In this document: positions 33,597 to 64,000 of the stretch, piece by piece
Position numbering within the stretch: position 1 is the first letter of the stretch
How the letters are laid out: each line of letters opens with the position of its first letter
IMG/VR virus record: IMGVR_UViG_3300027747_002221
Span: 1-64,000 of that record
Length of the DNA: 64,000 bases
Strand: one strand, 5' to 3'
Program-made: the position numbers and the translations under genes
Notes under the pieces: model-generated
The model's input: only the letters and a program-made list of their open reading frames with translations
What the model was told of the DNA's origin: nothing
The model's database searches: none

Positions 33597-33631
33597 ATAA
33601 ACCATTATTTTGTAGCCTGTACACAAAATAA

Positions 33632-33707
33632 TGGCGTCCCGTACCGGATTCGAACCGGTGTGAATAGCGTGAAAGGCTACTATCCTAGGCCTCTAGATGA
33701 ACGGGAC
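33632..33707 (-). tRNA. tRNA-Glu(TTC)
   Basis: GTAGC-CTTTCAC-GCTAT, GCCA. Confidence 0.92.
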
Positions 33708-33710
33708 ATT

Positions 33711-33784
33711 TGGTCCTCTCGGATGGTAACGATCCAACGTCTATCGATTATCAATCGATTGCTCTACCTTTGAGCTACAAGAGG
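33711..33784 (-). tRNA. tRNA-Ile(GAT)
   Basis: ATCGA-TTGATAA-TCGAT, CCA. Confidence 0.9.
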
Positions 33785-49670: not shown

Positions 49671-49956
49671 TATTTAACTCCTTGGTTTCAATGTCATGTA
49701 CATATAATAACATCATGCTATAGTGTAACACCTTTAGTATGTCTTGTCTATTCCTTCCGGCTTTCTTTCCGTATCTTTGAACATATTTCATTACGTTCCC
49801 TGCGGTAAATCCGACACCGTGTCCATTATCAATAATAAATTCAGTTGCCTGAAATTTATTCATTGAATAATGTTGGCCGTAAGTGGCGTCGATATATTCT
49901 TTCAACTCGTTTAAAAGTTGATCTTCATTATATTTGTAGTTTATTTCTTTCTCCAT
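49657..49956 (-). CDS. DUF3310-like protein
   Basis: YIDATYGQHYS...GFTAGNVMKYVQRYGKK...DILKVLHY. Confidence 0.7.
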   Translation of the reverse strand: MEKEINYKYNEDQLLNELKEYIDATYGQHYSMNKFQATEFIIDNGHGVGFTAGNVMKYVQRYGKKAGRNRQDILKVLHYSMMLLYVHDIETKELNNANQ

Positions 49957-50672
49957 GGGTATCCATCCTTAAATTTCTTTTCCATCACACTATTGCCCCA
50001 TAAAAAGAAGTCAGCCTTGACCGAATCTTCTCTATTACCAACTCTATAATTCAATGAATATATTCCATTAGTATCATACGTAAACTCATGTTCGCGTAAT
50101 ACTTGCATTATGATACGATCTACTTCGGGTTGGTCGTCTGGATGCCTGGCCCTACGATACCATAAAGGAGATATTTGTATTGCGATAGATGTAGGTAAAA
50201 AGTATGCGCCCACATCCACAAAGAATTCTTGTTCGCTTAAACACGTATGCCATTTACCTAAGTTTTCACAATCGTCAAGACAAACATACTTACTATCTTT
50301 ATCAACAATTTTTCTTAATGAGAATGCCCAGTCATTAGTTTCACAAACTTTAACTAATGTTTCAATATGAGCAGGGTCAATGTAATTATCTTCGTCGAGA
50401 AACATCACATAATCAGAATCAACTAGATAAGGAAATGAACCATATATTCTATGACCATTATATTGGCTGTGCCCCGTATTGTGGGGCAAGGTAACTACCG
50501 TCGCGGAAGTTTCTAAATCTAATTGTTTAACCGCTTTTTCCTGAAACTCAGGCCCATCTATTACTATAAGATGTTCCACATTTTCATATGTCTGTTTTAC
50601 TACAGAATCTGCATTTTGTTTTAGGTAATCAGATCCTGTTGTAGGAGTGATTACCGTCACCTTTTTACTCAT
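49941..50672 (-). CDS. Glycosyltransferase family 2 (GT-A)
   Basis: VTVITPT...IVIDG...FLDEDN. Confidence 0.85.
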   Translation of the reverse strand: MSKKVTVITPTTGSDYLKQNADSVVKQTYENVEHLIVIDGPEFQEKAVKQLDLETSATVVTLPHNTGHSQYNGHRIYGSFPYLVDSDYVMFLDEDNYIDPAHIETLVKVCETNDWAFSLRKIVDKDSKYVCLDDCENLGKWHTCLSEQEFFVDVGAYFLPTSIAIQISPLWYRRARHPDDQPEVDRIIMQVLREHEFTYDTNGIYSLNYRVGNREDSVKADFFLWGNSVMEKKFKDGYPWRKK

Positions 50673-50674
50673 AA

Positions 50675-52048
50675 TTAAACCTTGTAATTTTGTAAGAAAT
50701 AATTTAAATCTTCTGGAGTACCAATGCCCCACATATTTTTAATCTCTTTTACACGAATCTTCTTTTCATCTAAAATTGCTTCATTGTATACCGGACAAAC
50801 ATAAAACTCATTATTTGTTCTAATATTCTTTTCTATCATTTGACTAGTATACTTAACATAGTCGCTTCCTCGTTTCCAATAATAAACACCGACGGTGGCG
50901 TTATTACTAATAACTTTTTTCTCCGCAACTTCTTTTACAAATCCATCCTCGCCGATTGAGGCATAACTCCATTTAGGATGACTTGCTTCAAATGTTAAAA
51001 TGCCACCTTCAATCGAATCTGCACTAAAAGCATACATACATGAATTAGAATCCCATTCCATATATTGATCGCTATTAGCAATTAACAATGGGTTATCATT
51101 ATCTATAAATTCTTTTGCCAATAGCGTTGTGCATGCCGCACCTTCAGTTACTCCCTCGACTTGTACTATTTTACAGTCTGGAGCTATTAAGTTCAATAGA
51201 TATTTTAAATTATATTTGTCATAATGTTCTTTTTGTACTATGAAGATATAATTGGCATCTATATTCAAATTATTAACAACAACCTGAATCATTGGTTTAC
51301 CATTAACCTCAATTAAAGGTTTAGGAAATGTGTATCCCGCAGTGGCAAATCTTGATCCTGCACCTGCCATTGGAATCAATACATTCAATTTATTATCACG
51401 CCAAGGTACCTTTGGACTGTTAGCTAATCCGTTTAGTAACATTAATTCTTTTCTTATTTTCTCCATAGATAAATCTTCGCAATTTTCTACAGGTAATAAA
51501 TGTGCTCCGCTAGCAATTGCTCCTGTCCTTCCGATATGACTATCCTCAATTATTAAAGTTTCTTTTGCAGTATATCCCATGGCAGTCATACATTTCCAAT
51601 ACATTTCCGGAAATGGTTTCGGTCTTTTAACATCCTCATTACTAACATAGTAATCTATGTATTCCAATATACCAATTTTTAATAAAGATAATTTTACTGT
51701 TTCTCTAATACTATTACTTGCAACAACTATTTTATATCCTATTTGCTTTAGTTCTGTGAATATGGATATTAATTTTTGGTCATGTGTAAAATGTTTAAAT
51801 GCATCTATGGTTGCAGATTGTTTATTTTGCCATACAGAATTAAATTCCGCTTTTGGTAATCCTTTTTCTGAATGTAGTAATTCTAATTTGGCAGTGGTAT
51901 TTAATCCATCATACTTACTTAGATGTTCCTCTCTGGTAATTACATACTTAGGATCAATTTTATTTAAAGCAGAATTCAATGCATCGTAATGAAGTTCTCT
52001 ACTATCAATTAGAACTCCATCCAAATCAAAAATTATTAATTTAATCAT
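50675..52048 (-). CDS. HAD phosphatase fused to sugar-nucleotidyltransferase
   Basis: N-terminal IFDLDGVL...IEDS; C-terminal IPMAGAGSRF..GY.FPKPLI. Confidence 0.85.
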   Translation of the reverse strand: MIKLIIFDLDGVLIDSRELHYDALNSALNKIDPKYVITREEHLSKYDGLNTTAKLELLHSEKGLPKAEFNSVWQNKQSATIDAFKHFTHDQKLISIFTELKQIGYKIVVASNSIRETVKLSLLKIGILEYIDYYVSNEDVKRPKPFPEMYWKCMTAMGYTAKETLIIEDSHIGRTGAIASGAHLLPVENCEDLSMEKIRKELMLLNGLANSPKVPWRDNKLNVLIPMAGAGSRFATAGYTFPKPLIEVNGKPMIQVVVNNLNIDANYIFIVQKEHYDKYNLKYLLNLIAPDCKIVQVEGVTEGAACTTLLAKEFIDNDNPLLIANSDQYMEWDSNSCMYAFSADSIEGGILTFEASHPKWSYASIGEDGFVKEVAEKKVISNNATVGVYYWKRGSDYVKYTSQMIEKNIRTNNEFYVCPVYNEAILDEKKIRVKEIKNMWGIGTPEDLNYFLQNYKV

Positions 52049-52971
52049 ACTCGGTTAGGTTTAAAAATTTCAAAAGGATTTACAGGAATAGGTGCCAGTC
52101 TTTGTAACGGCACATGTCTAATAATATTATTATAGTATTGTACAAAACAATCTTCGGGCGTGTGGTATGTTTCGTAGGAATTTAAACTTCTACTTCCCCA
52201 CTCCCTCCATCGTTCTTCTTCTAAAAGCCACACTATTTTATCTTTTAGATCAGAACAATCCATATTGTATTCTACATATTCATCAAAGAACATATGTCCT
52301 TTTGATATACTATCTAAAGGTAACTTAGGTTGTAAAATTGCTGCACCTGCACTTGCCGCTTCCCAAATTCTCCAGCTATCGTAACTGTTACCTGGATAAT
52401 TTACCACAATCTTAGATCTATTTAAAATATCTAAAGTTTTAGGAATATTTCTTTCATGCGAATACTTTATTGCCCAATTGATATTTAACTGTGGTTGTAT
52501 TTGAACTAATTTATCTACAAAAAAGTTTCGTCTTTGATTTGTAGGTGCTCCAATAAAACAAACATCCACATCTCTTTCCCTATTTAAATAATCGTTCACC
52601 GATGGAATAGGAAAGTGCATTGGATATATAGGACAATTATAATGTCTATTGGTGTTACTTGTCAATTCTCTATGCATAATTAAATCGGGTGATCTCGAGA
52701 ACCATCTACTAACATCTTCCGAATCTGTATCATCATGCTGAATAAAGAAACTATTCTTTAAAGAAGTTTCTAGCAATCTACTAATTATAGGTAAATGATG
52801 CGGGTCATGTAGATATGCAATTACAACTTTATACTCACAGTTAGGAACGAATGATTCTAGTTCAGGCTCTCCTATAAAATCACAGTCGTACCCAGTATTT
52901 TCTAATGATTTAAAAATAAAAGTACTATTAGGTACCCAATGGTAATTTAAAAATAAAATATCTTTTATCAT
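52045..52971 (-). CDS. GT-B-like glycosyltransferase
   Basis: DVCFIGA...RR...LNRSKIVVN..G...RIWEA. Confidence 0.65.
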   Translation of the reverse strand: MIKDILFLNYHWVPNSTFIFKSLENTGYDCDFIGEPELESFVPNCEYKVVIAYLHDPHHLPIISRLLETSLKNSFFIQHDDTDSEDVSRWFSRSPDLIMHRELTSNTNRHYNCPIYPMHFPIPSVNDYLNRERDVDVCFIGAPTNQRRNFFVDKLVQIQPQLNINWAIKYSHERNIPKTLDILNRSKIVVNYPGNSYDSWRIWEAASAGAAILQPKLPLDSISKGHMFFDEYVEYNMDCSDLKDKIVWLLEEERWREWGSRSLNSYETYHTPEDCFVQYYNNIIRHVPLQRLAPIPVNPFEIFKPNRV

Positions 52972-52973
52972 AG

Positions 52974-53615
52974 TTATTCCACTTCCATAAATTCATATGA
53001 TATTGCAACTTTGTCTCCGGCACCGTGTTTGCATTGAAAGACTTTAAATCCACGATCTATAAGCATATTGTCTAATACATCAGGATCCTTAACGTGTGGA
53101 AATTCGTATCTTATAAAAGATATTGGTATGTTTATAGTCCTAAAAATGTTATCAAGAACATCATATTCTAATCCTTCAATATCTATAAACAATCCATGTA
53201 TTTTAGTTAAGTTATATTTTTCAACCAAATACTTAAATTCTTCAACTTTAACAAGGTCAAAAATTTCAGAAGCTTCATATCTAACAAGACTACTTTGTAC
53301 ACCCGGTTCGCGGACATGATCCTCGTTATGGTAAATCTTTTCATACTCATTTGTTTTTGTCGGAACAACGGCAATATTTTCAAAGTATAGTGTACTATTT
53401 GCATCCTTATAATTTTCTTTACACCGCTCAAATACTTCAGGCAATGGTTCTACTAGTATAGCGTTGTGTTTTTGTTCTAGGAGAATAGATCGTAACCCAT
53501 ACCCCTCACACATTATTCCGTCATTTGCTCCTAGTTGAATAAACCATTGCGTTTCCCCTGGTTTTAATTGTTCCTGATTTATTCGAATTAGATTTTGAAA
53601 GTCTATAGTTTTCAT
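52974..53615 (-). CDS. FkbM-family methyltransferase
   Basis: IQLGANDG...LVEP...FIDIEGLEYDVL. Confidence 0.8.
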   Translation of the reverse strand: MKTIDFQNLIRINQEQLKPGETQWFIQLGANDGIMCEGYGLRSILLEQKHNAILVEPLPEVFERCKENYKDANSTLYFENIAVVPTKTNEYEKIYHNEDHVREPGVQSSLVRYEASEIFDLVKVEEFKYLVEKYNLTKIHGLFIDIEGLEYDVLDNIFRTINIPISFIRYEFPHVKDPDVLDNMLIDRGFKVFQCKHGAGDKVAISYEFMEVE

Positions 53616-54289
53616 ATTATTTTGTATGTTATGTTATTATCTATTTTATGTTCCGAAGGAGTACCATAATTTGAAATATAAAATTTAAGGAAGTTTACTG
53701 CGTGCGTTGGATCAACATTGTGTTTGTCGTATATGTCTTGCATATGTTTATAAAAGGTACAATACTTTTCCATTACAGTATGATTACCAAATGCTAAATG
53801 ATCTGAAAAATCCCAGCCACCTATATCGGCAGGTATAATGAGTTCATCACTTTTATATAATTCTATATTCTTATAAGCAATATCTAATCGGGTTCTTAAT
53901 ATTATATCGTATTCACTAATAATAGATTTGAATCCCTCATTAACAAGATACCATTGGTCTCGGCATCTGTTAGCCCAAAATGTTCCATGTTCTATTGCTC
54001 TTGGATCAGTAACCATTACGTCATCCGATCTGTCGTTTTGTATAAAAGGTATTTTATTTTTATTGTAATGCTCAAGGTCAAAAATAGAACATGACATTAG
54101 ATTAGGAACATCCTTGAATATATCTCTTGTTACCTCAGAAGATATTATTTCTTTAGTTAATCTATTGTCACTAACATCCCAAGTTGCTATATACACGTCA
54201 GCATTATATTTGCGTATAAGTTCTTCTATAGTAAAAAATACTTTTTCAAATGTTCTAGAAAATCCTGTTAATAAAATTGCTACTCGCAT
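53612..54289 (-). CDS. Putative glycan biosynthesis protein (GT-like)
   Basis: RVAILLTGFSR...YDIILRTRLD...SDHLAFG. Confidence 0.55.
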   Translation of the reverse strand: MRVAILLTGFSRTFEKVFFTIEELIRKYNADVYIATWDVSDNRLTKEIISSEVTRDIFKDVPNLMSCSIFDLEHYNKNKIPFIQNDRSDDVMVTDPRAIEHGTFWANRCRDQWYLVNEGFKSIISEYDIILRTRLDIAYKNIELYKSDELIIPADIGGWDFSDHLAFGNHTVMEKYCTFYKHMQDIYDKHNVDPTHAVNFLKFYISNYGTPSEHKIDNNITYKII

Positions 54290-55068
54290 AAGGCATTATA
54301 CTCATGTAAATATTGTTCTTCAGTTAAATAGCATCCGAGCCGTTGTGGTTGAAAAGCCCAATTTAAATTTATAGCTCTTGCAGTAGTTATAGTATTCATA
54401 ACCTCAAAATTGTCAATTAGTGCGTGCATTGCTAAATCGTCTGGCCACTCTGTTATATCCAACTCAGGATTAACATATCTTTTAAGTAACATTTTGAACC
54501 AAAGATTCTCAGTACAAATAGAACCATTATTTCTTAACTCGGTTATTCTATTTATATCTAATTTTGGTATGTCCTCAAATACACGACCCCATTTTAAAAT
54601 ATCTTCTCTGGTACCAACTTGAAACCAATCGTTTGCCCTATATGTAGATATATCGATATCCGACCCTGGCCTAATAGTCATCATATTACCTATTAGTAAT
54701 TTCTCATCAAATGCACTAATGTTTGTTTTTGTTTTTTTTGGATAAGTATTTCTTAATTCGAATAGGTCTCTAAAATGTAATATGTCTGTTCTAGTAACCA
54801 TTACTTCAGACCCTGTACTAACAGATACGCCTACATAATAACTTTGTGCTTGTCTAAGAAACTGTTGCACAGGCCCTTCGCCTGGATCATCCGAACAAAC
54901 AATTTTATCCACACCAACTAACCCTTGTGTAGCATGTTGTTGACTATTCCATGTACTTAAGATAAGTTCTCCAGTATGCCAACTACGAATACTATCAATG
55001 ACCTGTTGTATATACACACTAGGTCTCTTATCAAATGCAATACTACCTCTTATAACTACAGATCTCAT
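54280..55068 (-). CDS. WavE-like lipopolysaccharide synthesis protein
   Basis: SVVIRG...ELILSTW...DPG...RTD...NDWFQVG. Confidence 0.55.
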   Translation of the reverse strand: MRSVVIRGSIAFDKRPSVYIQQVIDSIRSWHTGELILSTWNSQQHATQGLVGVDKIVCSDDPGEGPVQQFLRQAQSYYVGVSVSTGSEVMVTRTDILHFRDLFELRNTYPKKTKTNISAFDEKLLIGNMMTIRPGSDIDISTYRANDWFQVGTREDILKWGRVFEDIPKLDINRITELRNNGSICTENLWFKMLLKRYVNPELDITEWPDDLAMHALIDNFEVMNTITTARAINLNWAFQPQRLGCYLTEEQYLHEYNALCE

Positions 55069-55505
55069 TTTAGTTTTCCTACAAAATCGCTACATACTCC
55101 GTAACAGTTTAAATCTTTTATTCCGTCAAGGGTAGGATTCTTCCACTCAGGCATAACACATACACTACGAGTGGTTAGATCTTTGCCGGGATATGTCCAT
55201 ATCCATTTATGACTAGTAATAACATAATCGTCATTCTGATGCCAAAAATAATTAAGTTGAGTATTTGTCAACCATCTTAGTGCTGATAAATTTTTGGCAT
55301 GTATCCAAAGACCAAACTGATTAAGAAAATCTTCTCTGATATGATAATCGGGCCTATCATGACCTAACCACAATTCACTATTCTCAACCCATAGATCAAT
55401 TTCACAATCAAAGCCTTCCTTGAGAGCAACTTTAATTTGTTCTGGTCTATTTTCTAAATTTACATTTGGCCCATCGAATAGGCCTCTATGAGCAATTAAT
55501 TTCAT
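55065..55505 (-). CDS. Short GDPD/PLC-like phosphodiesterase
   Basis: LIAHRG...EN...EIDLW...GHD...WIHAKN. Confidence 0.65.
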   Translation of the reverse strand: MKLIAHRGLFDGPNVNLENRPEQIKVALKEGFDCEIDLWVENSELWLGHDRPDYHIREDFLNQFGLWIHAKNLSALRWLTNTQLNYFWHQNDDYVITSHKWIWTYPGKDLTTRSVCVMPEWKNPTLDGIKDLNCYGVCSDFVGKLK

Positions 55506-56239
55506 TTTCTAATATAGATGTTGTTGCCTTCATATTCGAAACCATTAATTTCAAATCCTCCAGGCAGTTCTTCAAAGCCAAGCTTAAATAAAAATTCTTC
55601 TATTTCAGGTTTTAAACTTTGGCCTTCGTAATATTCCTTTAGCCCAACTTCTGTAAAAATAACCTTTACATTTTTTAGTGTTTGAGAACCACCCTTAAAT
55701 ACATCTAGTTCTCCACCCTGCACATCTACCCATAAGGCATCAACAGATTTGATACCATTAGTCATTGCCCAGTGATCTAAGGTAAGTGCTTCCACCATAA
55801 TTTCTTTTTGTATCCAATTCTGATTAAAGAAAGTACCATTCATACCGTCAATAAATTTATACTTACTAGCAGCACCTGGATTATATCCTACGCCCTGAGA
55901 TGTATCAATATCATAAAATGTTAGTGGTCCATTTTTATTGGACAAGGCTACATTATAAATTTGTATTCTATCTTGTACGTCCTTTGGAACGCTACTCTTC
56001 ATCTGAATACATTCTCTTAAATTTTGAGGGCTAGGTTCAAATGCATGAATTGTTGCTGTAGGAAAAGCATAAGCAAATTCAATACTTTGTTTTAAATGCC
56101 AACTACCTATATCCAATACTGTTTCTATTGTATCAAAATCAATATAGTCAGCAATCTGTAATATTTTAGGTGAAGCAATATTTTCTCTGCCCGAGTTTGC
56201 CCAGCCTTTTAGTCTTTCTATGTAGTGATCATTCGCCAT
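55502..56239 (-). CDS. FkbM-family methyltransferase
   Basis: VLDIGS...HAFEP...WVDVQGGELDVF. Confidence 0.85.
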   Translation of the reverse strand: MANDHYIERLKGWANSGRENIASPKILQIADYIDFDTIETVLDIGSWHLKQSIEFAYAFPTATIHAFEPSPQNLRECIQMKSSVPKDVQDRIQIYNVALSNKNGPLTFYDIDTSQGVGYNPGAASKYKFIDGMNGTFFNQNWIQKEIMVEALTLDHWAMTNGIKSVDALWVDVQGGELDVFKGGSQTLKNVKVIFTEVGLKEYYEGQSLKPEIEEFLFKLGFEELPGGFEINGFEYEGNNIYIRK

Positions 56240-56558
56240 GTTGTATTACCTTTTTATCATTGCCGCTAGGCGTCTTTACACAAACAACCGTAGTATCTTC
56301 CAAAAATACAGGATCAGAAATTTCCCAGGGTTCGACTATAAAGATATCGCCAGTTTTTAATTCCTTATCCTGCATTATCATTCTACCACTAACTAATAAA
56401 TTAATCTCTGTGGTTGTGGTGTGATAATGCATATCCCATTTTTGACCTGCAGGATGTGTTCTATAATTAACTTCAAAATCTTTAGTATGATATGCAGTTG
56501 GTTCAAAGCCTCCGACAAACCAACCATCATGCATATCTTTTATGTTTAGTATTTTCAT
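56229..56558 (-). CDS. Cupin-fold protein
   Basis: GWFVGGF...HYH...TEINLL..GDIFIVEP. Confidence 0.65.
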   Translation of the reverse strand: MKILNIKDMHDGWFVGGFEPTAYHTKDFEVNYRTHPAGQKWDMHYHTTTTEINLLVSGRMIMQDKELKTGDIFIVEPWEISDPVFLEDTTVVCVKTPSGNDKKVIQHGE

Positions 56559-57652: not shown

Positions 57653-58344
57653 ACCCTTACCCAATCATTAATAAGATGAAATTGGCTGCCTCGACCAACA
57701 TCATGATAGTATAATTTCTCAGCAGTTAAGTCTAAACTATCTGCTAGATGAATTATGCTACTATCTATACAATGTATTTCTTTGGCGTTTTTAATTACGT
57801 CTGTCCAATCTAATATAGTATCGGTCAATCCTGATTCAACATAGTATATAGGCAAATCTGTTGTTATGTCTAAATTGTAAGAACCAGGACTACCTTGACA
57901 ATGTACTAAGCAATAGTCTTTATCTTTTATAAACTTATTAAAGAATTCTTTACTAGAAGAATCATCTTTCGGCATTTGAAATTTATCCCATCTATCCTGA
58001 AATTCAATACCCGACATACCATAGAATTCAATATCGAAAAATTCAGATCCGCCACCCGTATAAATTATATCTAAGTGCGGTATATCTGTACGATACTCGG
58101 CAACAAATTGTTGTTCTTTTTCATATGTCTCATAAGGAATAGATACAGGAATTACTATATCAGAGTCTTCGTATAGTTTATTTACTGTAGGCAAATTAAT
58201 ATCTTTAACCATAAGATATAATCGCTCTACATCATATTTTTCTATAAGTCCATAAACCATACCATTACATATGATGTGGTCACCTAAACCTAAGTGGTGG
58301 TGTAATACTAATTCTTTAAATTTTTCCATCGTATACAGGCTCAT
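57649..58344 (-). CDS. Putative glycosyltransferase-like protein
   Basis: HHHLGLGDHIICNG...IHCIDSS..HL. Confidence 0.45.
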   Translation of the reverse strand: MSLYTMEKFKELVLHHHLGLGDHIICNGMVYGLIEKYDVERLYLMVKDINLPTVNKLYEDSDIVIPVSIPYETYEKEQQFVAEYRTDIPHLDIIYTGGGSEFFDIEFYGMSGIEFQDRWDKFQMPKDDSSSKEFFNKFIKDKDYCLVHCQGSPGSYNLDITTDLPIYYVESGLTDTILDWTDVIKNAKEIHCIDSSIIHLADSLDLTAEKLYYHDVGRGSQFHLINDWVRV

Positions 58345-58957
58345 CGTTTTCTGTGTATGTTTGACCTATGAAATTGTTATTTTCAAAATCATATGTCTCT
58401 CTCATCCAATCTACTTCTTTAACTCCATATATTGCAGTATCGTTCATTATGTTTGGCCAAACTTTATCTCTCAAATAAAATTGATCTACCAAATATTGTT
58501 TAACGGAAATATATTCTTGCATAGCATCCTTAAGTGTACTATCCATTATTATATTCTTCTTACCCCACATACCTGCTAATATAGGAAATTCGTAGTGTGC
58601 GTCGTGGTCTCGAATAACCATATAATTATATTCGGATTCGAGCCAGTTGTCAATAAGTTCTTTTTCTCTTAAACTTAATCTTGAATCTGTGTCCCTAGAT
58701 AATATCACACCTGGATTATTGAACATCATTTCAAATCTCCAGAATGCACCAAAACTATCATCTGTTACTTCTTTAACTATTGTATTTTTAAATGCAGATA
58801 GTTTATCTATTGTTTCTTTTGGTACGGTTGCATCGTAGTAAAATACGCATTTCCATTCAGGAAATATTTCTTCTGCAAGTTCTGCATTTCTAATTGCGCC
58901 CTGAAGATATTTAGGATTATCGCCCCAAATACTAAATGTGAAGTATTTGTCTACCAT
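58316..58957 (-). CDS. Putative glycosyltransferase-like protein
   Basis: FSIWGDNPKY...WRF...SRDTDSR...RDH...ILAGMWG. Confidence 0.5.
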   Translation of the reverse strand: MVDKYFTFSIWGDNPKYLQGAIRNAELAEEIFPEWKCVFYYDATVPKETIDKLSAFKNTIVKEVTDDSFGAFWRFEMMFNNPGVILSRDTDSRLSLREKELIDNWLESEYNYMVIRDHDAHYEFPILAGMWGKKNIIMDSTLKDAMQEYISVKQYLVDQFYLRDKVWPNIMNDTAIYGVKEVDWMRETYDFENNNFIGQTYTENDEPVYDGKI

Positions 58958-59895
58958 ACAAAATTTGACTTGTGCCAATCCACAACTTCTTCCAAACAAG
59001 TATCAAAATCTGCTTCGCATGACCAACCTATACTTTTTAACTTACTATCATCTATAGCATAACGTACATCTTGACCCTGGCGCTTTTCCGAAAAATCCAT
59101 ATACTTGTCGTAGTCTGTTCCGGTGCCAAAATAATTATCTATAATTTTTCTTGCAACAACGATATTCTTTTCTTCATAGTTACCCGAGATATTATAAATC
59201 TCATTGGTAACATTTTGAGAAACAATTAAAGAAACTGCATTTGCCGTATCTGAAACATGAAGCCATGTTCTAATAGGTTCACCGTTATCGTGCATAACGA
59301 TTGGTCTATTTAAAGTTAAATTCTTGCATGCTCGTGGAATAAATTTTTCTACATATTGTCCTATGCCATAATTATTAGTTGGTCTAACAATTACGTAAGG
59401 AATATCATATGTTCTTGCCCAGGCAATAACTAACATATCTGCGGCAGCTTTAGTTGCGGAATATGGATTGCTTGGTTTTAATAAATCTGTTTCAGTATGA
59501 AACCCTGAGACTAAGTCACCATACACTTCATCTGTACTAAAGTGTAGCAGTGTCGGTCTTCGTGATTTTGGTTTTTGTTTGATGAGTTCTAATATCTTAT
59601 GAACTCCGTTGATGTTACTTCGCAGGAAAACATCTGAGCTGACAATACTATTGTCCACATGAGTTTCTGCGGCAGTATTAATAAAGTAATCACAATCAAC
59701 TAATCGTTCGATATTGTTTATATCGCAACCATCAAATTTAAAATTTTTATATTCTAGTAATTCATAAAGAAAGTCTCTATTACTAGCGTATGTTTTACTA
59801 TCTATACCATAAACATAATGACCTTCATCTAGGAATTTTTTGGTTACATGGTAACCTATAAATCCTAAACATCCTGTGACATAAAGTATTTTCAT
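58951..59895 (-). CDS. NDP-glucose 4,6-dehydratase (RmlB-like SDR)
   Basis: TGCLGFIG, AAETHVD, STDEVYG, PSNPYSATKA, TNNYG. Confidence 0.9.
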   Translation of the reverse strand: MKILYVTGCLGFIGYHVTKKFLDEGHYVYGIDSKTYASNRDFLYELLEYKNFKFDGCDINNIERLVDCDYFINTAAETHVDNSIVSSDVFLRSNINGVHKILELIKQKPKSRRPTLLHFSTDEVYGDLVSGFHTETDLLKPSNPYSATKAAADMLVIAWARTYDIPYVIVRPTNNYGIGQYVEKFIPRACKNLTLNRPIVMHDNGEPIRTWLHVSDTANAVSLIVSQNVTNEIYNISGNYEEKNIVVARKIIDNYFGTGTDYDKYMDFSEKRQGQDVRYAIDDSKLKSIGWSCEADFDTCLEEVVDWHKSNFVW

Positions 59896-60656
59896 TTCAT
59901 ATATTCTTTCATTCCGTACATAACACCATATAGATCAAAATCTGATAAAAGATCTAGCATAGTGGAATCGCCAATATATGGTTTATCACTTGTGGATTCA
60001 ACTATTATTTCTTTATCTATATTATTTATATCGCAGAATAGTTGTAAAAATTCACTCAATGTTCTTTTCTTTTTATACACGCAATCTATTTGCCTGTGAT
60101 GATAGTTGTTGTTTATAACATATTCTATAATTTTATAAAAATCGCCAATGTAGATATAATCAAATTTTCTATCATTAGTTAAAACGAAAGGACCATCCGA
60201 TGCTAAAAATTTTTTTAATAATCTACTTTCCTTTTCTTCGGAACCAAAACATCCAAACAATTTAAGATTGGTAAATTTACTGGGATCTAAATCCCTAGAA
60301 ATCATTCTTTTAGAAAAAGCATATGCGCTGTTATTGGAATAATCTTGTTCAATACCGGATCCTATATTAATGTATCTTCCAAATAAATCAGAATTGGATT
60401 TGAAATTATAATACATTGCTAAGTTTTTAGCAACTATACTTGGATCATTACTGTTAACATTTTCGTTGCCACCAAAAGTAAGACAATTTATAACGAAATC
60501 GGGTTGAGATAGTTCTAATACATTTCTTACAGCGGCAGCGTCAGTTACATCTATACCCGGTTTGGAGATAGACATTACTGCATTATTCTTTGCTAATCGA
60601 GGAGCTATGTATGAACCTATAAATCCTCCAGCACCTAAAATAAGAATATTCTTCAT
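59892..60656 (-). CDS. NAD-dependent sugar epimerase/reductase (SDR)
   Basis: GAGGFIG...YAFSK (YxxxK). Confidence 0.75.
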   Translation of the reverse strand: MKNILILGAGGFIGSYIAPRLAKNNAVMSISKPGIDVTDAAAVRNVLELSQPDFVINCLTFGGNENVNSNDPSIVAKNLAMYYNFKSNSDLFGRYINIGSGIEQDYSNNSAYAFSKRMISRDLDPSKFTNLKLFGCFGSEEKESRLLKKFLASDGPFVLTNDRKFDYIYIGDFYKIIEYVINNNYHHRQIDCVYKKKRTLSEFLQLFCDINNIDKEIIVESTSDKPYIGDSTMLDLLSDFDLYGVMYGMKEYMK

Positions 60657-61396
60657 TTTATTTTCACTATCATTTCTTTGGTTAATTCCTCATCTGAAAG
60701 GAACGGAGTCATATCATGCAGACCAGCTTGCTTGCCATTCTTCAATGCTTGCGCTGGTAAGATCTCCTGGTCTTCTAAACATTTACAATCTATAATCATA
60801 GGACCAACTGTTTCTAATAATCTAGGTAAATTATCAAGACTAGTTTTATTTTTAATAGGAGCATATTTCATACCAAAGGATGCAGCAATGTTTCTAAAAT
60901 CAGGAAACCATAATCCTGATTCAGAACTTGTACCGAATACTCGCCCATCAAAGTATTTAGATTGAGTATTTTTAATACTTAAGTAGCCATTGTTATTCAA
61001 TATAATAAACTTAATATTAAGATCATGGAGTTTTACCACAGCCAGTTCTTGAAGATTGCTCATAAAACTACCATCACCCATAATAGATACAACAGGTTGA
61101 TTACTAGCCATGCTTACACCGATTGCCGCCGGTAATGCCCAGCCCATATCTGCTTGTGCTGGGCTCGATATAAATCGTTGTCCCTGTTTAACATTTAATG
61201 CAACAGGACCAGCATAACTAATACTACCAGCATCCCCCATTAAAATGTCTTCGGGTCTACTGTGTTTATTAATAGCATCTAATACTGCGTATAAATTTAA
61301 TGCGTTATTTTCATTAGTTGCTTCCCACTCGGGTTGCATTACCGGCCAAATATTTTTCCAATGGTTACATTTATCTATCCAATGTTGATGCTTCAT
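60653..61396 (-). CDS. TPP-dependent enzyme, C-terminal (TPP-binding) half
   Basis: QADMGWALPAAIG...GDGSF..N...NN (GDG-x24-NN). Confidence 0.88.
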   Translation of the reverse strand: MKHQHWIDKCNHWKNIWPVMQPEWEATNENNALNLYAVLDAINKHSRPEDILMGDAGSISYAGPVALNVKQGQRFISSPAQADMGWALPAAIGVSMASNQPVVSIMGDGSFMSNLQELAVVKLHDLNIKFIILNNNGYLSIKNTQSKYFDGRVFGTSSESGLWFPDFRNIAASFGMKYAPIKNKTSLDNLPRLLETVGPMIIDCKCLEDQEILPAQALKNGKQAGLHDMTPFLSDEELTKEMIVKIK

Positions 61397-62403
61397 ATCA
61401 TTTCCTTAAAAAAGTCAGATAGCGACATACAAATCTTTTCATTGATAAATAGTACATCTTTCTTTAGTTCATTATCATCTATGTCAATTAGTATTTTATA
61501 ACTCTCAGGGCTAAACTGGGTTGGGTCATATCCAACAACACTAGAATTTAAACTACTACCCAATACTAATAAACAATCCGCATTCTGCATAGCAAAATTC
61601 CCTGCTCTGCTACCCTTAATACCTACCGCACCAATATTCAAAGGATGTGACCCAGGAAAGTAATCTCTTGCACCATATGTACTAACAAAAGGTAAATCAT
61701 ATGTTTCAATAAAATTTACAAATTCTTTAACTGTGTTACTTTGTCTGATACCGTAACCTGCCAAGACAACTGGTCTTTGTGCTGTATCTAGTATAGTCTT
61801 TATTCTAGATAAATTATTTCTCGTATAGGATGGGGCTGGGTCTACATATAAAGTATAATCCTCTGGCATTTGTGCTGTTTGTACATCTCCCGGAATATCT
61901 ATCCAAACAGGACCTCGACGACCTTCTTTAGCTAGGTGTATAGCATAACTTAATTGATATGCTACATCTTCGGGGCTAGTAATAAACTTACTATATTTAG
62001 TCATCCCGGCATATGTACTAACAATATCGTGTTCTTGGACACCATATTTTCTAAGACTAATACCCTTTTGCATATTGATCCAACTACTACAAGTATTTAA
62101 TCTAACATTGCCTGATAAAAATAAAACAGGGACACCATCTTGCCAGGCATTTAATACAGATGTAGCACAGTTAGTTCCCGCACATCCTGTTGTAGGATTG
62201 ACTACTGAGAGTTCACCTGTAAATTTACTCTCACCAATAGCAGCATGACCGGCACCTTGTTCATGATGATAACAGATATAACCTATCTTACCGTGCTTAA
62301 TAAAACCATCGTTTAATCCGCTAGCACCCCCGCCCATTAACCCATGGACTTTAGTAATACCTTGCTGGTATAAGTAATTAGCAATCCAATCGCATACTCT
62401 CAT
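61393..62403 (-). CDS. TPP-dependent enzyme, N-terminal and middle domains (acetolactate-synthase/YerE-like)
   Basis: HHEQGAGHAA...TTGCAGTN...GPVWIDIPGD...RPVVLAG. Confidence 0.88.
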   Translation of the reverse strand: MRVCDWIANYLYQQGITKVHGLMGGGASGLNDGFIKHGKIGYICYHHEQGAGHAAIGESKFTGELSVVNPTTGCAGTNCATSVLNAWQDGVPVLFLSGNVRLNTCSSWINMQKGISLRKYGVQEHDIVSTYAGMTKYSKFITSPEDVAYQLSYAIHLAKEGRRGPVWIDIPGDVQTAQMPEDYTLYVDPAPSYTRNNLSRIKTILDTAQRPVVLAGYGIRQSNTVKEFVNFIETYDLPFVSTYGARDYFPGSHPLNIGAVGIKGSRAGNFAMQNADCLLVLGSSLNSSVVGYDPTQFSPESYKILIDIDDNELKKDVLFINEKICMSLSDFFKEMI

Positions 62404-62410
62404 ATTTTTC

Positions 62411-63733
62411 CTAAGTAAATAAACCCATAAATCCATCTACAACTTCACCAATATATTCAATTTGTTCGGGTGTAATAACTGGACTTGTTCCATGGAAGAA
62501 TGTGTTTGTCATAACCATTGTTGCAATAGGGAAATTTGCTTTAGCATCTGCAGGATCCATAATATGAGAATACGCAGGTTGTAGCATAATATTACCAGCA
62601 AAATATGGCCTTGTCTGAATAAGTTTCTCTTCTAAGTATTCCACAATATCACTTCGTGTAAAAGGAGAACCTTTACGAATAGTTAAGGGGAATGCAAACC
62701 AACTGGGATCAGAATGTTCTTGTGGTCTAGGCAAATGGAAATACTCTTCATACTTACTATAGATATCAAATAACAATTTATAGTTACGTCTGCGTAGGAA
62801 ATGAATCTGATCTAATTTTTCTAGTTGAACTAATCCCATTGCTCCCTGCATTTCAATTGGTTTTAAATTATAACCAATTTCATCATACACATACTTGTGG
62901 TCAAATATTTCACCCGGCATTGTAGGAATCCATTCTTGGAATCGTTTACCGCAAGTACCACACTTTAGTTTGTTGGCTTCAGGACCTACACAATAACAAC
63001 CTCTGCCCCATTCTCTAAATGATCTAGCAATAACTTCTGTCTCATAAGTTTTACATGCTACAAATCCGCCCTCACCCATAGTCATATGATGTGCAGGATA
63101 AAAAGAACAAGATGCCATTTCACCAAATGATCCTAATGGCTTGCCGTCATAAGTACTACCTAAAGCATCACAACAATCTTCCAATAAGATTAAATCATAC
63201 TTATTAACTAATTCCATAACCCATCTCATATTAGGAGGATTGCCTAATACGTGAGCAAATGTAATTACCTTAATATTATGTTGCTTAATTAATTCTTCTG
63301 CTTTGGTTAAATCTAGATTAAGTGTGTCTAATTCAATGTCTAAAAATACAGGTTCAAACCCTAGTTGTAATGTAGGGTTTAGCGTTGTAGGAAATCCTGC
63401 GATTGGCATTAATACTTTAGTACCTTTAGGTAAATTATAACCTCTTTTAGAAGTCAATGTAGCCATCATAAGTAGATTGGAACTTGATCCTGAGTTTGTT
63501 AAGATACCGCGTTCTTTACCAAACTGTTTAGGGAATTCCTTCTCAAACTTTAATGACTTGTCCCCCATAACTAACCAACCATCGAGTAAAGTATCTATGA
63601 CAGACAAATACTCGTGTTCGTCAAAATAGGGGCCTGCGTAATTTACGAAATCTTTACCCGCAGTCCATGTCTTATTTGCTGCCTTATTCTGAAAATAAGC
63701 AGCTACACCATTAATGATATCTTGTTTATTCAT
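62411..63733 (-). CDS. rfbH: CDP-4-keto-6-deoxyglucose 3-dehydratase E1 (RfbH/DdhC)
   Basis: NSGSSSNL, EDCCDALG, SFYPAHH (His in place of the PLP Lys), GRGCYC...C.C iron-sulfur motif. Confidence 0.88.
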   Translation of the reverse strand: MNKQDIINGVAAYFQNKAANKTWTAGKDFVNYAGPYFDEHEYLSVIDTLLDGWLVMGDKSLKFEKEFPKQFGKERGILTNSGSSSNLLMMATLTSKRGYNLPKGTKVLMPIAGFPTTLNPTLQLGFEPVFLDIELDTLNLDLTKAEELIKQHNIKVITFAHVLGNPPNMRWVMELVNKYDLILLEDCCDALGSTYDGKPLGSFGEMASCSFYPAHHMTMGEGGFVACKTYETEVIARSFREWGRGCYCVGPEANKLKCGTCGKRFQEWIPTMPGEIFDHKYVYDEIGYNLKPIEMQGAMGLVQLEKLDQIHFLRRRNYKLLFDIYSKYEEYFHLPRPQEHSDPSWFAFPLTIRKGSPFTRSDIVEYLEEKLIQTRPYFAGNIMLQPAYSHIMDPADAKANFPIATMVMTNTFFHGTSPVITPEQIEYIGEVVDGFMGLFT

Positions 63734-63734
63734 A

Positions 63735-64000
63735 TTACCAGTATGCAAAATTAGTTTCTAAAAATTTATAATCCTCGCGCTTCTGCGCACTATCTATGGG
63801 CATAGGATACATCCAATGGTCATTGTACATATTATACCAACCTTTGTAACCATCAACCTTTGTCCATCTATATCCTAGTATACCAAAGAATATTTGTATA
63901 GCTCCACCCGTTTGAATACCTATTTTACCTTGTTGTTTAGCATAGTCTACATAAAAAGGAGACGATGTTGTTGCGCCAGAAAGTAAAACATCATAGTCAT
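63735..64000 (-). CDS. Glycan-related protein, C-terminal part (truncated by window edge)
   Basis: My translation ...GKIGIQTGGAIQIFFGILGYRW...HWMYP...ETNFAYW*; pattern seen in glycan-cluster hypotheticals. Confidence 0.5.
   Translation of the reverse strand, partial: DYDVLLSGATTSSPFYVDYAKQQGKIGIQTGGAIQIFFGILGYRWTKVDGYKGWYNMYNDHWMYPMPIDSAQKREDYKFLETNFAYW

What the first reader, a model, noticed from the sequence alone, without database searches (positions are those of the whole stretch)
49941..64000. Phage glycan-biosynthesis island of more than 14 kb
Seen: at least 16 contiguous genes, including GT2, GT-B-like, two FkbM methyltransferases, a WavE-like protein, a GDPD-like protein, a cupin, two NTase/HAD fusions, a 4,6-dehydratase, an SDR, a TPP enzyme and RfbH. 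The island continues beyond the window edge. Inference: the phage builds a complex methylated glycan for virion glycosylation, host surface conversion or DNA decoration.
Basis: partly seen in the sequence, partly recalled or inferred. Interest (0 to 1): 0.6.

Follow-up and report, generated by a model that had tools for sequence, protein, structure and literature searches.

The report
Phage glycan operon with branched-sugar pathway
A 222-kb T4-like lake phage carries a roughly 20-kb operon of 24 genes that appears to build a methylated glycan containing fucose and a rare carbon-branched deoxysugar; such islands are known in aquatic phages, but the branched-sugar enzymes are new for a phage.

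Summary
All the named domains are present except the 'GDPD-like' protein.

- **Extent:** The island runs past the window edge to base 69733 of the 222,055-bp virus record. It has 24 tightly packed minus-strand ORFs. All 23 that could be compared are under purifying selection.
- **Precursor pathways:** One is GDP-L-fucose (Gmd, Fcl-like, GT10 fucosyltransferase). The other is a yersiniose-type 4-C-branched 3,6-dideoxyhexose: NTase, 4,6-dehydratase, Fe-S/PMP 3-dehydrase RfbH/E1, a YerE-like thiamine enzyme split into two coupled subunits, and an SDR.
- **Tailoring enzymes:** At least six glycosyltransferases (two found only by fold) and three FkbM methyltransferases.
- **Missing parts:** The genome encodes no E3 reductase, no membrane protein of the Wzx/Wzy/ligase type and no pyrimidine hydroxymethylase.
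- **Regulation:** A T4 late-promoter motif, otherwise found before the capsid, scaffold and sheath genes, lies 28 nt before the first island gene and is kept in a diverged relative.
- **Most likely role:** A late, cytoplasmic glycosylation system, probably acting on virion proteins. Host-envelope remodelling is a close rival and DNA decoration is unlikely.
- **Novelty:** Comparable islands exist in cyanomyoviruses, so this is a new variant of a known kind.

The parts
49941..50732 (-). GT2-family glycosyltransferase, the last gene of the island. It is kept next to DUF3310 and gp45 in related phages. The true start is probably an internal ATG, because the listed GTG ORF overlaps the upstream gene by 58 nt.
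   Evidence: Pfam PF00535, 39.4 bits. Homologues of 49-55% identity sit at the same edge in L010 and L020.
50675..52048 (-). Fusion of a beta-phosphoglucomutase-like HAD domain (N-terminal) with a sugar-1-phosphate nucleotidyltransferase (C-terminal). Inferred to be a sugar-phosphate activation module; the substrate is not determined.
   Evidence: PF13419 101 bits and PF00483 41.8 bits. TIGR02009 82 bits and rmlA_long 46.6 bits, both below cut-off.
52045..52971 (-). GT-B-like glycosyltransferase (borderline).
   Evidence: PF13524, 25.7 bits against a cut-off of 25. pN/pS 0.07.
52974..53615 (-). FkbM-family methyltransferase 1.
   Evidence: PF05050, 43.6 bits.
53612..54289 (-). GT-A-fold glycosyltransferase candidate with no Pfam family. 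It is not GDPD-like.
   Evidence: AF2 model pLDDT 93.7. Foldseek E 1.6e-5, TM about 0.5, to glycogenin and GT6 enzymes. phrog_13607.
54280..55068 (-). WavE-like LPS-core synthesis family protein.
   Evidence: PF07507, 50.9 bits.
55065..55505 (-). 146-aa protein of unknown function.
   Evidence: No Pfam hit. phrog_34507 at 5e-23. pN/pS 0.15.
55502..56239 (-). FkbM-family methyltransferase 2.
   Evidence: PF05050, 78.3 bits.
56229..56576 (-). Small cupin of 115 aa. It could be a sugar isomerase or epimerase, but the role is not determined.
   Evidence: Cupin_7 and Cupin_2 at about 20 bits, below cut-off. phrog_24762 at 2.6e-31.
56555..57664 (-). Fusion of a sugar-1-phosphate nucleotidyltransferase (N-terminal) with a capless HAD phosphatase-like domain (C-terminal). 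Inferred entry step of the branched-sugar pathway.
   Evidence: PF00483 38.1 bits and HAD hits at residues 250-325. rmlA_long 62.6 bits.
57649..58344 (-). 231-aa protein from a virus-only family, function unknown, with a weak GT9-like hint.
   Evidence: No Pfam or PHROG hit. Atlas nearest clusters score 0.98 and are unnamed viral ones; the GT9 cluster scores only 0.92 with 160 shared features.
58316..58999 (-). 227-aa protein, a tentative GT-A-type transferase.
   Evidence: Pfam Fringe at E 0.2. Atlas gives a 'hexosyltransferase' cluster at 0.98 and GT8/Nucleotid_trans at 0.92. A 34% homologue sits at the same position in L010.
58951..59895 (-). NDP-hexose 4,6-dehydratase. It is closer to the dTDP-glucose type than to the CDP-glucose type.
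   Evidence: PF16363 181 bits. TIGR01181 292 bits (cut-off 365) against TIGR02622 65 bits.
59892..60656 (-). Short extended-SDR reductase, candidate YerF-like side-chain or C-4 ketoreductase. It is the most variable gene of the cassette.
   Evidence: PF01370, 49.9 bits. 72% identity in L008 and 32-48% in L009, L010 and L020.
60653..61396 (-). YerE-like ThDP enzyme, small subunit (PP domain with a GDG...NN ThDP-binding motif).
   Evidence: PF02775, 106 bits. Best PDB hit is 8RPH JanthE at 113 bits, against 72 bits for AHAS. The ATGA overlap with the upstream ORF is kept in 13 of 16 loci.
61393..62403 (-). YerE-like ThDP enzyme, large subunit (PYR and middle/FAD domains). The real start is Met12 of the listed ORF 61393-62436.
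   Evidence: PF02776 and PF00205. Best PDB hit is 8RPH JanthE at 161.9 bits, against 144.8 bits for AHAS. Homologues begin at M12. A 1-nt indel variant at 62404 lies in the spacer.
62411..63748 (-). RfbH/E1-type PMP- and [2Fe-2S]-dependent NDP-4-keto-6-deoxyhexose 3-dehydrase.
   Evidence: NF011936, 445.7 bits against a cut-off of 423. PDB 3BCX E 9e-102 over the full length. His220 (YPAHH at 217) and Cys192/193/251/253/263/266.
63735..64000 (-). C-terminal 88 codons of a 306-aa ORF (63735-64655 of the virus record). It is a weak GT-D-like protein.
   Evidence: PF22882, 17.6 bits, below cut-off. Homologues of 50-100% identity in related phages.

Best explanation
The region is the first 14 kb of a 19.8-kb operon of 24 genes (49941-69733 of the 222-kb record) in an uncultured T4-like freshwater myovirus. 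The operon makes activated sugars and assembles them into a methylated oligosaccharide in the cytoplasm of the infected cell.

**Shown at the sequence or fold level**

1. GDP-L-fucose branch: Gmd, an Fcl-like epimerase/reductase and a GT10 fucosyltransferase.
2. Branched-sugar branch:
   - A nucleotidyltransferase gives an NDP-hexose.
   - A 4,6-dehydratase gives the NDP-4-keto-6-deoxyhexose.
   - The E1-type Fe-S/PMP 3-dehydrase gives the NDP-4-keto-3,6-dideoxyhexose.
   - A YerE-like thiamine-diphosphate enzyme is made of two translationally coupled subunits. By analogy it adds an acyl branch from a 2-keto acid, most simply pyruvate, at C-4.
   - An SDR then reduces the product, giving a yersiniose-type sugar.
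3. At least six glycosyltransferases and three FkbM methyltransferases.

**Inferred**

- Electrons for E1 come from a host ferredoxin/flavodoxin-reductase system, because no E3 is encoded.
- The operon is transcribed in the late class, together with the capsid and tail genes.
- All products are soluble, and the genome encodes no initiating, flipping, polymerising or ligating membrane enzyme. The most likely acceptor is therefore a phage protein of the virion, in a cytoplasmic glycosylation of the kind known from chloroviruses and mycobacteriophages.
- The sugar's nucleotide, the keto-acid donor and the acceptor are not established.
For: **Domain assignments.**: RfbH and Gmd pass the NCBIfam equivalog cut-offs.

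**E1 hallmarks.** The match to 3BCX covers the full length. His220 replaces the usual Lys and the cluster cysteines are kept.

**YerE-like identity.**
- Both halves of the TPP enzyme are closest to JanthE (8RPH), a YerE-like enzyme, rather than to acetolactate synthases (PMC12188165).
- The GDG...NN motif is present and the catalytic HEQ glutamate is invariant.
- RfbH, TPP-NM and TPP-C are adjacent in 16 of the 17 IMG/VR contigs found (GC 0.33-0.55; no RfbH match in L020). The TPP subunits sit beside an SDR and a 4,6-dehydratase, with an RfbH-like DegT gene two genes upstream, on 360-488 kb cellular scaffolds.
- This is the gene logic of the yersiniose and erwiniose clusters (PMC9306805, PMC12247030).

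**The split is real.**
- The ATGA stop/start overlap is kept in 13 of 16 loci.
- The best 120 listed clusters are all 323-347 aa.
- The complex model scores 0.94 against a best control of 0.00. That mark was reached by 51 of 78 solved complexes and 2 of 108 mismatched pairs. The runs agree in at least 97% of contacts and the partner's pLDDT is 90. The pass may reflect memory of single-chain homologues.

**Extra glycosyltransferases by fold.**

**Soluble-only enzyme set.** The highest 19-residue hydropathy in the island is 1.46. No ORF in the genome has more than four hydrophobic segments.

**No E3.** Fer2 and NAD_binding_1 are absent from the genome.

**Late class.**
- 17 of 29 gene-strand TATAAATA motifs are intergenic, although only about 8% of the genome is non-coding. 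This enrichment is my own estimate, not a formal test.
- The motif lies 36-52 nt before the gp23, scaffold and sheath genes, and 28 nt before Gmd.
- The motif and the hairpin upstream of it are kept in a diverged relative, with a compensatory stem change.

**Purifying selection.** Seen on every ORF compared.

**Possible transcription in nature.** Contigs from lake RNA libraries cover parts of the cassette, three of them without a mismatch. DNA carry-over in those libraries is not excluded.
Against: - No acceptor has been observed, and late timing fits other roles as well.
- Homologous cassettes in cellular genomes presumably serve surface polysaccharides. WavE is an LPS-core family.
- The usual reading of such islands in cyanomyoviruses is host-envelope modification (PMC12801897).
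- The 4,6-dehydratase is of the dTDP type while E1 is closest to a CDP-sugar enzyme, so the nucleotide is unclear.
- No E3 is present, so the 3-deoxygenation depends on an unverified host supply of electrons.
- The SDR is only generically assigned.
- A perfect sigma-70-type promoter upstream of cobS (71052-71024) could also drive early read-through, if the hairpin does not terminate.
Confidence: 0.5

Rival explanations
1. Host-envelope remodelling. The phage supplies unusual NDP-sugars, transferases and methyltransferases that feed into the host's own lipid-carrier, flippase and ligase machinery. This would alter LPS, capsule or S-layer glycans during infection, for example to block superinfection, avoid adsorption of progeny to lysing cells or change grazing.
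For: - Similar 22-24-gene 'cell-wall' sets in P-SSM2, S-SCSM1 and S-SCSM2R are read this way (PMC12801897).
- Synechococcus phage RN05-S has a comparable island.
- The cassette has 66-73% identical counterparts in cellular scaffolds.
- A WavE LPS-core family member is present.
- The island sits in a hypervariable slot between cobS and gp45 whose content differs among related phages, as O-antigen loci do.
Against: - The phage encodes no initiating phosphoglycosyl transferase, flippase, polymerase, ligase or Gtr-type membrane protein.
- A foreign repeat unit would have to be accepted by host Wzx, Wzy and WaaL.
- The island carries the late-promoter motif of the virion genes. That leaves little time for envelope turnover before lysis.
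Confidence: 0.33
2. DNA hypermodification. The transferases attach sugars to modified bases of the phage genome to evade restriction.
For: - T4-like phages glucosylate or arabinosylate hmC.
- Virus glycosyltransferases that put diverse glycans on DNA are cited in PMC12619734 (its reference 46).
- A GTP cyclohydrolase I gene (84617-85297) hints at some base-modification chemistry elsewhere in the genome.
Against: - The genome has no thymidylate-synthase/pyrimidine-hydroxymethylase family gene.
- By my own knowledge rather than a tool result, known DNA glycosylation needs one to a few transferases. It does not need 24 genes with a fucosyltransferase, three O-methyltransferases and a branched dideoxyhexose pathway.
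Confidence: 0.05
3. Not a phage feature. A bacterial polysaccharide locus was joined to a phage contig by misassembly, or the genes are decaying cargo.
For: - The record is a metagenome assembly.
- Close cellular homologues of the cassette exist.
Against: - The same island with the same phage flanks occurs in four further IMG/VR contigs from other samples. Related phages use the same slot.
- Fourteen DNA runs, each from a different study, hold at least half of the stretch.
- Island GC matches the genome.
- A phage late promoter lies at its head.
- pN/pS is 0.04-0.27.
Confidence: 0.02

Closest known systems
Glycan ('LPS / cell-wall synthesis') gene islands of T4-like cyanomyoviruses (P-SSM2, S-SCSM1, S-SCSM2R, S-B05/RN05-S)
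   Same: - A T4-like backbone.
- One long co-directional block of NDP-sugar dehydratases and epimerases, many glycosyltransferases and FkbM methyltransferases.
- RN05-S even has an RfbH homologue (42% identity) next to fucosyltransferases (PMC12801897).
   Different: - This phage has no psbA or hli and is only about 49% identical in DNA polymerase, so it is probably not a cyanophage.
- No DNA-level similarity was found.
- The YerE-like ThDP enzyme has no true counterpart in the 50,697 phage records. The only matches are ilvB-type genes at about 31% identity, in fragmentary or bacterial-looking records.
CDP-yersiniose A pathway of Yersinia pseudotuberculosis (DdhA-D, YerE, YerF) and the related erwiniose, caryophyllose and gastriose clusters
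   Same: The same order of chemistry is implied:
- nucleotidyltransferase;
- 4,6-dehydratase;
- E1 3-dehydrase (E 9e-102 to the Yersinia enzyme's structure);
- an AHAS-like ThDP enzyme;
- a reductase.

These lie within one 7-kb cassette (PMC9306805, PMC12247030).
   Different: - The ThDP enzyme is split into two subunits.
- The dehydratase is of the dTDP-glucose type.
- No E3 reductase is encoded.
- The setting is a lytic phage rather than an O-antigen locus.
- The donor keto acid and the product are unknown.
JanthE (PDB 8RPH), a YerE-like ThDP/FAD enzyme of Janthinobacterium
   Same: It is the best solved match for both halves. The large subunit scores 161.9 bits and aligns to residues 6-332 of JanthE. 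The small subunit scores 113.1 bits and aligns to residues 358-563. The split therefore falls in the linker between the middle and PP domains.
   Different: - JanthE is one chain of 619 residues and has a CDG ThDP motif.
- The phage enzyme has the canonical GDG motif.
- Its physiological substrate is also unknown (PMC12188165).
Virus-encoded virion glycosylation (chlorovirus PBCV-1 capsid glycans; mycobacteriophage capsid and tail-tube O-glycans)
   Same: - In both, the virus brings its own soluble transferases.
- In PBCV-1 it also brings its own GDP-fucose enzymes and sugar methylation. This is my own knowledge of the literature.
- Phage virion glycosylation is cited in PMC12619734 and PMC12801897 (Freeman et al. 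2023).
   Different: No glycan has been measured here. The mycobacteriophage systems use only a few transferases and no sugar-synthesis pathway.

Membership tests
Glycan-biosynthesis islands of T4-like aquatic myoviruses | T4-like phage backbone around the island | tested here: met
   The genome encodes a gp45 clamp, a gp43 polymerase (49% identity to Synechococcus phages), the gp23 capsid protein, a scaffold protein, a sheath protein and gp46/47.
Glycan-biosynthesis islands of T4-like aquatic myoviruses | Contiguous block of NDP-sugar enzymes with several glycosyltransferases | tested here: met
Glycan-biosynthesis islands of T4-like aquatic myoviruses | Cyanophage hallmarks (psbA, hli) | tested here: not met
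   PF00124 and PF00504 are absent from a record rated 100% complete. The phage should be filed as a relative, not as a cyanophage.
Yersiniose-type branched 3,6-dideoxyhexose pathway | E1 (RfbH/DdhC) 3-dehydrase with His in place of the PLP lysine and Fe-S cysteines | tested here: met
   NF011936 scores 445.7 bits against a cut-off of 423. PDB 3BCX matches at E 9e-102. His220 and six Cys are at or near the E1 positions.
Yersiniose-type branched 3,6-dideoxyhexose pathway | E3 (DdhD/AscD) iron-sulphur flavoprotein reductase | tested here: not met
   No Fer2 or NAD_binding_1 domain occurs anywhere in the genome. A host reductase must be assumed.
Yersiniose-type branched 3,6-dideoxyhexose pathway | CDP-glucose-specific nucleotidyltransferase and 4,6-dehydratase | tested here: not met
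   The dehydratase scores 292 bits on the dTDP-glucose model against 65 bits on the CDP-glucose model. The NTase is nearest to rmlA_long. The nucleotide is therefore probably not CDP.
Yersiniose-type branched 3,6-dideoxyhexose pathway | ThDP enzyme adjacent to the deoxy-keto-sugar genes | tested here: met
   Adjacency holds in 16 of the 17 viral contigs. On the cellular scaffolds the RfbH-like gene lies two genes upstream of the TPP pair.
Yersiniose-type branched 3,6-dideoxyhexose pathway | YerF-type reductase of the branch | tested here: inconclusive
   An SDR follows the ThDP genes here and in L009, L010, L020 and L022. It is only generically assigned.
Yersiniose-type branched 3,6-dideoxyhexose pathway | Product is a 4-C-branched 3,6-dideoxyhexose | not testable with these tools
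   This needs enzymology with NMR or MS.
YerE-like ThDP lyases (decarboxylase superfamily) | PYR, middle/FAD and PP domains, a GDG-X-NN ThDP motif and the catalytic Glu | tested here: met
   PF02776 and PF00205 are on one ORF and PF02775 is on the next. The GDGSFMSN...NNNGY motif is present and the HEQ glutamate is invariant. The domains lie on two polypeptides, unlike the described members.
YerE-like ThDP lyases (decarboxylase superfamily) | Closer to characterised YerE-like enzymes than to acetolactate synthases | tested here: met
   JanthE is the top PDB match for both halves (161.9 against 144.8 bits; 113.1 against 71.8 bits). A direct comparison with YerE or ErwE was not possible.
YerE-like ThDP lyases (decarboxylase superfamily) | Carboligation of a 2-keto acid onto a keto-sugar | not testable with these tools
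   This needs a biochemical assay.
GDP-L-fucose de novo pathway | Gmd, GDP-fucose synthase and a fucosyltransferase | tested here: met
   Gmd (TIGR01472) scores 540 bits against a cut-off of 415. Fcl (NF047922) scores 427.6 bits, just under its cut-off of 500. The GT10 N- and C-terminal domains score 70 and 62 bits.
Serotype-converting phage modules (GtrABC, Oac, phage Wzy) | Integral-membrane modifying enzymes | tested here: not met
   No hydrophobic segment at or above 1.6 occurs in any island protein. No ORF in the genome has more than four such segments.
DNA glycosylation systems of T-even type | Pyrimidine hydroxymethylase (thymidylate-synthase family) that creates the attachment base | tested here: not met
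   PF00303 is absent.

The most novel reading that the evidence does not exclude
A lytic freshwater T4-like phage coats its own virion, from a late operon, with a methylated glycan containing fucose and a C-branched 3,6-dideoxyhexose. The branched sugar is made by a two-subunit YerE-like thiamine enzyme that draws electrons for the deoxygenation step from the host. This would be the first branched-chain sugar pathway of a virus and the first complex virion glycan in the T4 lineage. The split enzyme would define a widespread, uncharacterised architecture of sugar-branching ThDP enzymes.
Probability: 0.3. Interest if true: 0.7.

Novelty: new variant of a known kind. Interest (0 to 1): 0.5.

Why it matters
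- **An open question made testable.** Large glycan islands are recurrent in aquatic T4-like phages, yet no one has shown what they glycosylate. This one offers a late promoter, an all-soluble enzyme set and a chemically distinctive sugar that could be traced by mass spectrometry.
- **New enzyme material.** The two-subunit YerE-like enzyme belongs to an abundant family. The search found 1,694 relatives, and the best 120 listed clusters are all 323-347 aa. Enzymes of this class are sought as catalysts for chiral tertiary alcohols.
- **Wider consequences.** If the glycan sits on the virion, it would bear on phage recognition, stability and grazing in lakes.

Tried and rejected
- **Near-identity search.** A megablast of the island against 50,697 phage records gave no match.
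- **Host or donor identity.** This could not be established.
  - A class-level search found the split enzyme only in the centre genome among 401 sampled.
  - tblastn against plasmids found only ilvB-type genes at about 32%.
- **'GDPD-like' protein.** No support was found; see the observation check.
- **Cupin as mannose-6-phosphate isomerase.** Comparison with the RN05-S ORF annotated that way gave only 19 bits. The role is left open.
- **Sigma-70 promoter and terminator scans.** Counts equal the shuffled expectation (51 against 50.7; 75 against 84.1). Only the one perfect site upstream of cobS is mentioned.
- **Overall TATAAATA count.** The gene-strand count (29) is about what base composition predicts. 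Only its placement is informative.
- **Atlas look-ups of the 231-aa and 227-aa proteins.** These gave virus-only unnamed clusters and weak GT9 or GT8 hints.
- **Searches not run.** The costly all-representatives protein search was not needed. No alternative genetic code was used.

Full report
**Setting.** The window is the first 64 kb of a 222,055-bp IMG/VR virus record rated complete. The genome is T4-like.
- It has a gp45 clamp at 49014-49670 and DUF3310 at 49657-49956.
- Its DNA polymerase is about 49% identical to those of Synechococcus myoviruses.
- It encodes gp46/47-like proteins, and the gp23 capsid protein, a scaffold protein and a tail sheath.
- It has 25 tRNA genes.
- It lacks psbA and hli, so it is probably not a cyanophage.
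- Runs that hold the DNA are freshwater and lake metagenomes. Fourteen runs, each from a different study, hold at least half of the stretch.

**Observation.** From 49941 to the window edge there are 17 complete ORFs and one cut ORF on the minus strand. They overlap or lie at most 9 nt apart.
- The 'GDPD-like' protein is not confirmed.
  - No ORF gives such a hit, even at E<=5.
  - The likeliest candidate (53612-54289) has 36 homologues without any Pfam domain.
  - It models with pLDDT 93.7 as a GT-A fold resembling glycogenin and GT6 enzymes.
- The island continues to 69733:
  - a weak GT-D-like ORF, 63735-64655;
  - a 243-aa protein, 64627-65358;
  - a GT10 fucosyltransferase, 65358-66236;
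  - an unknown ORF, 66246-67028;
  - a third FkbM, 67025-67780;
  - an Fcl-like enzyme, 67777-68727;
  - Gmd, 68720-69733.
- cobS follows the island.
- The 243-aa protein belongs to a family of 371 proteins without a Pfam model. It folds as a GT-A transferase (pLDDT 88.1; Foldseek E 5e-6 to B4GALNT1, ppGalNAc-Ts, STIV A197 and TarP).

**Real, phage-borne and selected.**
- Four other IMG/VR contigs carry the same island, with island proteins 72-100% identical.
- Three more distant relatives (L010, L011, L020) use the same slot between cobS and GT2-DUF3310-gp45, but with partly different genes.
- Against the relative L008, every one of the 23 comparable ORFs has pN/pS of 0.04-0.27 at pS of 0.33-0.56. 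This includes the ORFs without a known family.
- Island GC is 0.336 against 0.356 for the genome.

**The branched-sugar cassette.**
- *RfbH is an E1-type 3-dehydrase.*
  - It passes the NCBIfam equivalog cut-off (445.7 against 423 bits).
  - It aligns end to end with the structure of the Yersinia CDP-6-deoxy-L-threo-D-glycero-4-hexulose-3-dehydrase (3BCX, E 9e-102).
  - It keeps the diagnostic His220 (YPAHH) and the cysteines around the Fe-S site: C192/193, C251, C253 and C263/266.
- *The TPP enzyme lies directly downstream, on two ORFs.*
  - The PYR and middle domains are on 61393-62403. The start is Met12 of the listed ORF, as in all homologues.
  - A 1-nt insertion variant at 62404 in other lakes falls in the 7-nt spacer.
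  - The PP domain is on 60653-61396, which starts in an ATGA overlap.
  - That overlap is kept in 13 of 16 loci whose GC ranges from 0.33 to 0.55.
  - The best 120 listed clusters are all 323-347 aa long. The split is therefore an evolved two-subunit form and not a frameshift.
- *The two subunits are predicted to bind.*
  - The complex model scores 0.94 against a best control of 0.00.
  - That mark was reached by 51 of 78 solved complexes and 2 of 108 mismatched pairs.
  - The runs agree in at least 97% of contacts and the partner's pLDDT is 90.
  - Single-chain homologues are solved, so this shows likeness rather than proof of binding.
- *Both halves are closest to a YerE-like enzyme.*
  - Among solved structures, both find JanthE (8RPH) first. 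The scores are 161.9 against 144.8 bits, and 113.1 against 71.8 bits, for the best acetolactate synthase.
  - JanthE is a YerE-like enzyme (PMC12188165).
  - YerE adds the two-carbon branch to CDP-4-keto-3,6-dideoxyglucose in yersiniose synthesis and YerF reduces it. ErwE and its mycobacterial relatives add longer branches (PMC9306805, PMC12247030).
- *Synteny supports the pathway.*
  - RfbH, TPP-NM and TPP-C are adjacent in 16 of the 17 viral contigs found (no RfbH match in L020).
  - Scaffolds of 360-488 kb carry genes typical of cells (a CHASE2 cyclase, FecR, AhpC). There the TPP pair sits with an SDR and a 4,6-dehydratase, and an RfbH-like DegT gene lies two genes upstream.
  - With the NTase fusion at 56555-57664, the dehydratase at 58951-59895 and the SDR at 59892-60656, the cassette has every step of a yersiniose-type pathway except E3.
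- *Departures from the Yersinia model.*
  - No Fer2 or NAD_binding_1 domain exists in the genome, so a host reductase must be assumed. Other E1 homologues are known to work this way; that is my own knowledge.
  - The dehydratase is of the dTDP-glucose type rather than the CDP-glucose type (292 against 65 bits).
  - The nucleotide and the keto-acid donor remain open.

**The rest of the island.**
- Gmd (540 bits, over its cut-off), the Fcl-like enzyme (427.6 bits, just under its cut-off of 500) and the GT10 enzyme give a GDP-fucose branch.
- The HAD(beta-PGM-like)-NTase fusion may supply a hexose-1-phosphate-derived nucleotide sugar. This is inference only.
- The well-supported transferases are GT2, the GT-B-like protein, WavE, GT10 and the two GT-A folds.
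- The 227-aa, 231-aa and 306-aa proteins are tentative transferases.
- Three FkbM enzymes imply O-methylated sugars.

**Where does the glycan go?**
- *No membrane machinery.* No island protein has a hydrophobic 19-mer above 1.46. No ORF in the genome has more than four such segments. The phage therefore brings no phosphoglycosyl transferase, flippase, polymerase, ligase or Gtr-type protein.
- *No DNA attachment base.* The genome has no thymidylate-synthase/hydroxymethylase family gene. This argues against hmC- or hmU-based DNA glycosylation.
- *A late promoter at the head of the island.*
  - The 93-nt spacer between cobS and Gmd holds a hairpin (69787-69804) followed by TATAAATA (69762-69769), 28 nt before the Gmd start.
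  - Genome-wide, 17 of the 29 gene-strand copies of the motif are intergenic, although only about 8% of the sequence is non-coding. This enrichment is my own estimate, not a formal test.
  - Fourteen of those copies lie 21-60 nt before an ORF. These ORFs include gp23, the scaffold protein, the tail sheath and two proteins of about 1,500-1,600 residues.
  - The relative L010 has only 58% identity in CobS. It keeps both the hairpin, with a compensatory C-G to A-T change and here a T-run, and the motif, while the rest of the spacer differs.
  - The island therefore looks like a late transcription unit.
- *Possible transcription in lakes.* Contigs from lake RNA libraries cover parts of the cassette, three of them without a mismatch. 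DNA carry-over cannot be excluded.
- *Weighing.* Taken together, I favour cytoplasmic glycosylation of virion proteins. Remodelling of the host envelope through the host's own machinery is a close second, and it is the usual reading of such islands (PMC12801897).

**Comparison and novelty.**
- Large glycan islands are known in T4-like cyanomyoviruses. S-SCSM2R has 22 such genes with homologues in P-SSM2 and S-SCSM1 (PMC12801897).
- RN05-S has a comparable island of about 17 kb, with an RfbH 42% identical to this one but no ThDP enzyme.
- In the collection of 50,697 phage records, the ThDP subunit matches only ilvB-type genes at about 31% identity, in fragmentary or bacterial-looking records.
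- In the searchable literature, no paper links YerE or yersiniose with phages.
- The finding is therefore a new variant of a known kind. It is an ordinary class of island with an unreported branched-sugar pathway, a conserved split architecture of the key enzyme and a late-promoter context.

**Limits.**
- The host is unknown.
- YerE and ErwE sequences were not at hand for a tree.
- All functions are inferred from sequence, fold and synteny.
- Coordinates above 64000 refer to the virus record, whose numbering continues that of the window.

Noticed in passing
window 579-8161 (-): A low-GC block (0.26-0.28, against 0.36 for the genome) of co-directional genes. It encodes three 2OG-Fe(II) oxygenases (579-1175, 1896-2534, 4684-5187) and two radical-SAM proteins (3593-4684; 6446-8161, the latter with a B12-binding domain). 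It looks like a peptide- or metabolite-modification cluster.
   Followed up: no
window 28018-33784 (-): An array of 25 tRNA genes covering most amino acids. It accounts for the local GC rise to 0.42.
   Followed up: partly
virus record 77944-84620 (L002 14944-20000, L027 685-1620): A second, smaller sugar cluster beyond gp46/47. It has an extended SDR epimerase/dehydratase (360 aa), a GT4-like transferase (389 aa) and another GT1-like protein (311 aa). GTP cyclohydrolase I follows at 84617-85297, which may belong to a deazaguanine or folate pathway.
   Followed up: partly
virus record 69762-69804 and genome-wide: The T4 late-promoter motif TATAAATA is strongly concentrated in intergenic DNA (17 of 29 copies in about 8% of the sequence). 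It precedes the gp23, scaffold and sheath genes and two giant ORFs. A conserved hairpin after cobS precedes the copy at the head of the island.
   Followed up: yes
virus record 71024-71052 (-): A perfect extended sigma-70-type promoter (TTGACA, 17 nt, TG-n-TATAAT) lies in the 37-nt spacer upstream of cobS. Promoter-like sites overall are no more frequent than in shuffled sequence.
   Followed up: no
virus record 204149-209056 (L003 2094-7001, -): A 1,635-residue late-promoter-driven protein, probably a fibre, gives a Pfam Phycobilisome-family hit (39.8 bits, over the cut-off of 22.2, residues 966-1030). This is odd for a phage without photosynthesis genes.
   Followed up: no
virus record 181571-182065 (L028 6571-7065, -) and window 22261-23619 (-): Two cytidylyltransferase-like proteins lie outside the island. 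The first is 56% identical to the 'cytidylyltransferase' at the head of the RN05-S glycan island.
   Followed up: no
L021 8899-11730: In one high-GC viral contig, the RfbH and ThDP genes match only in pieces, and the TPP-NM frame stops after 130 codons. The cassette may be decaying there.
   Followed up: no
L012-L019 (GC 0.46-0.55): A second group of viral contigs shares only GT10-like, GT2, RfbH (38-41%), the split ThDP pair (50-63%) and a homologue of the 297-aa Anp1-like protein (virus record 89697-90590) with this phage. The cassette therefore moves between unrelated virus genomes.
   Followed up: partly
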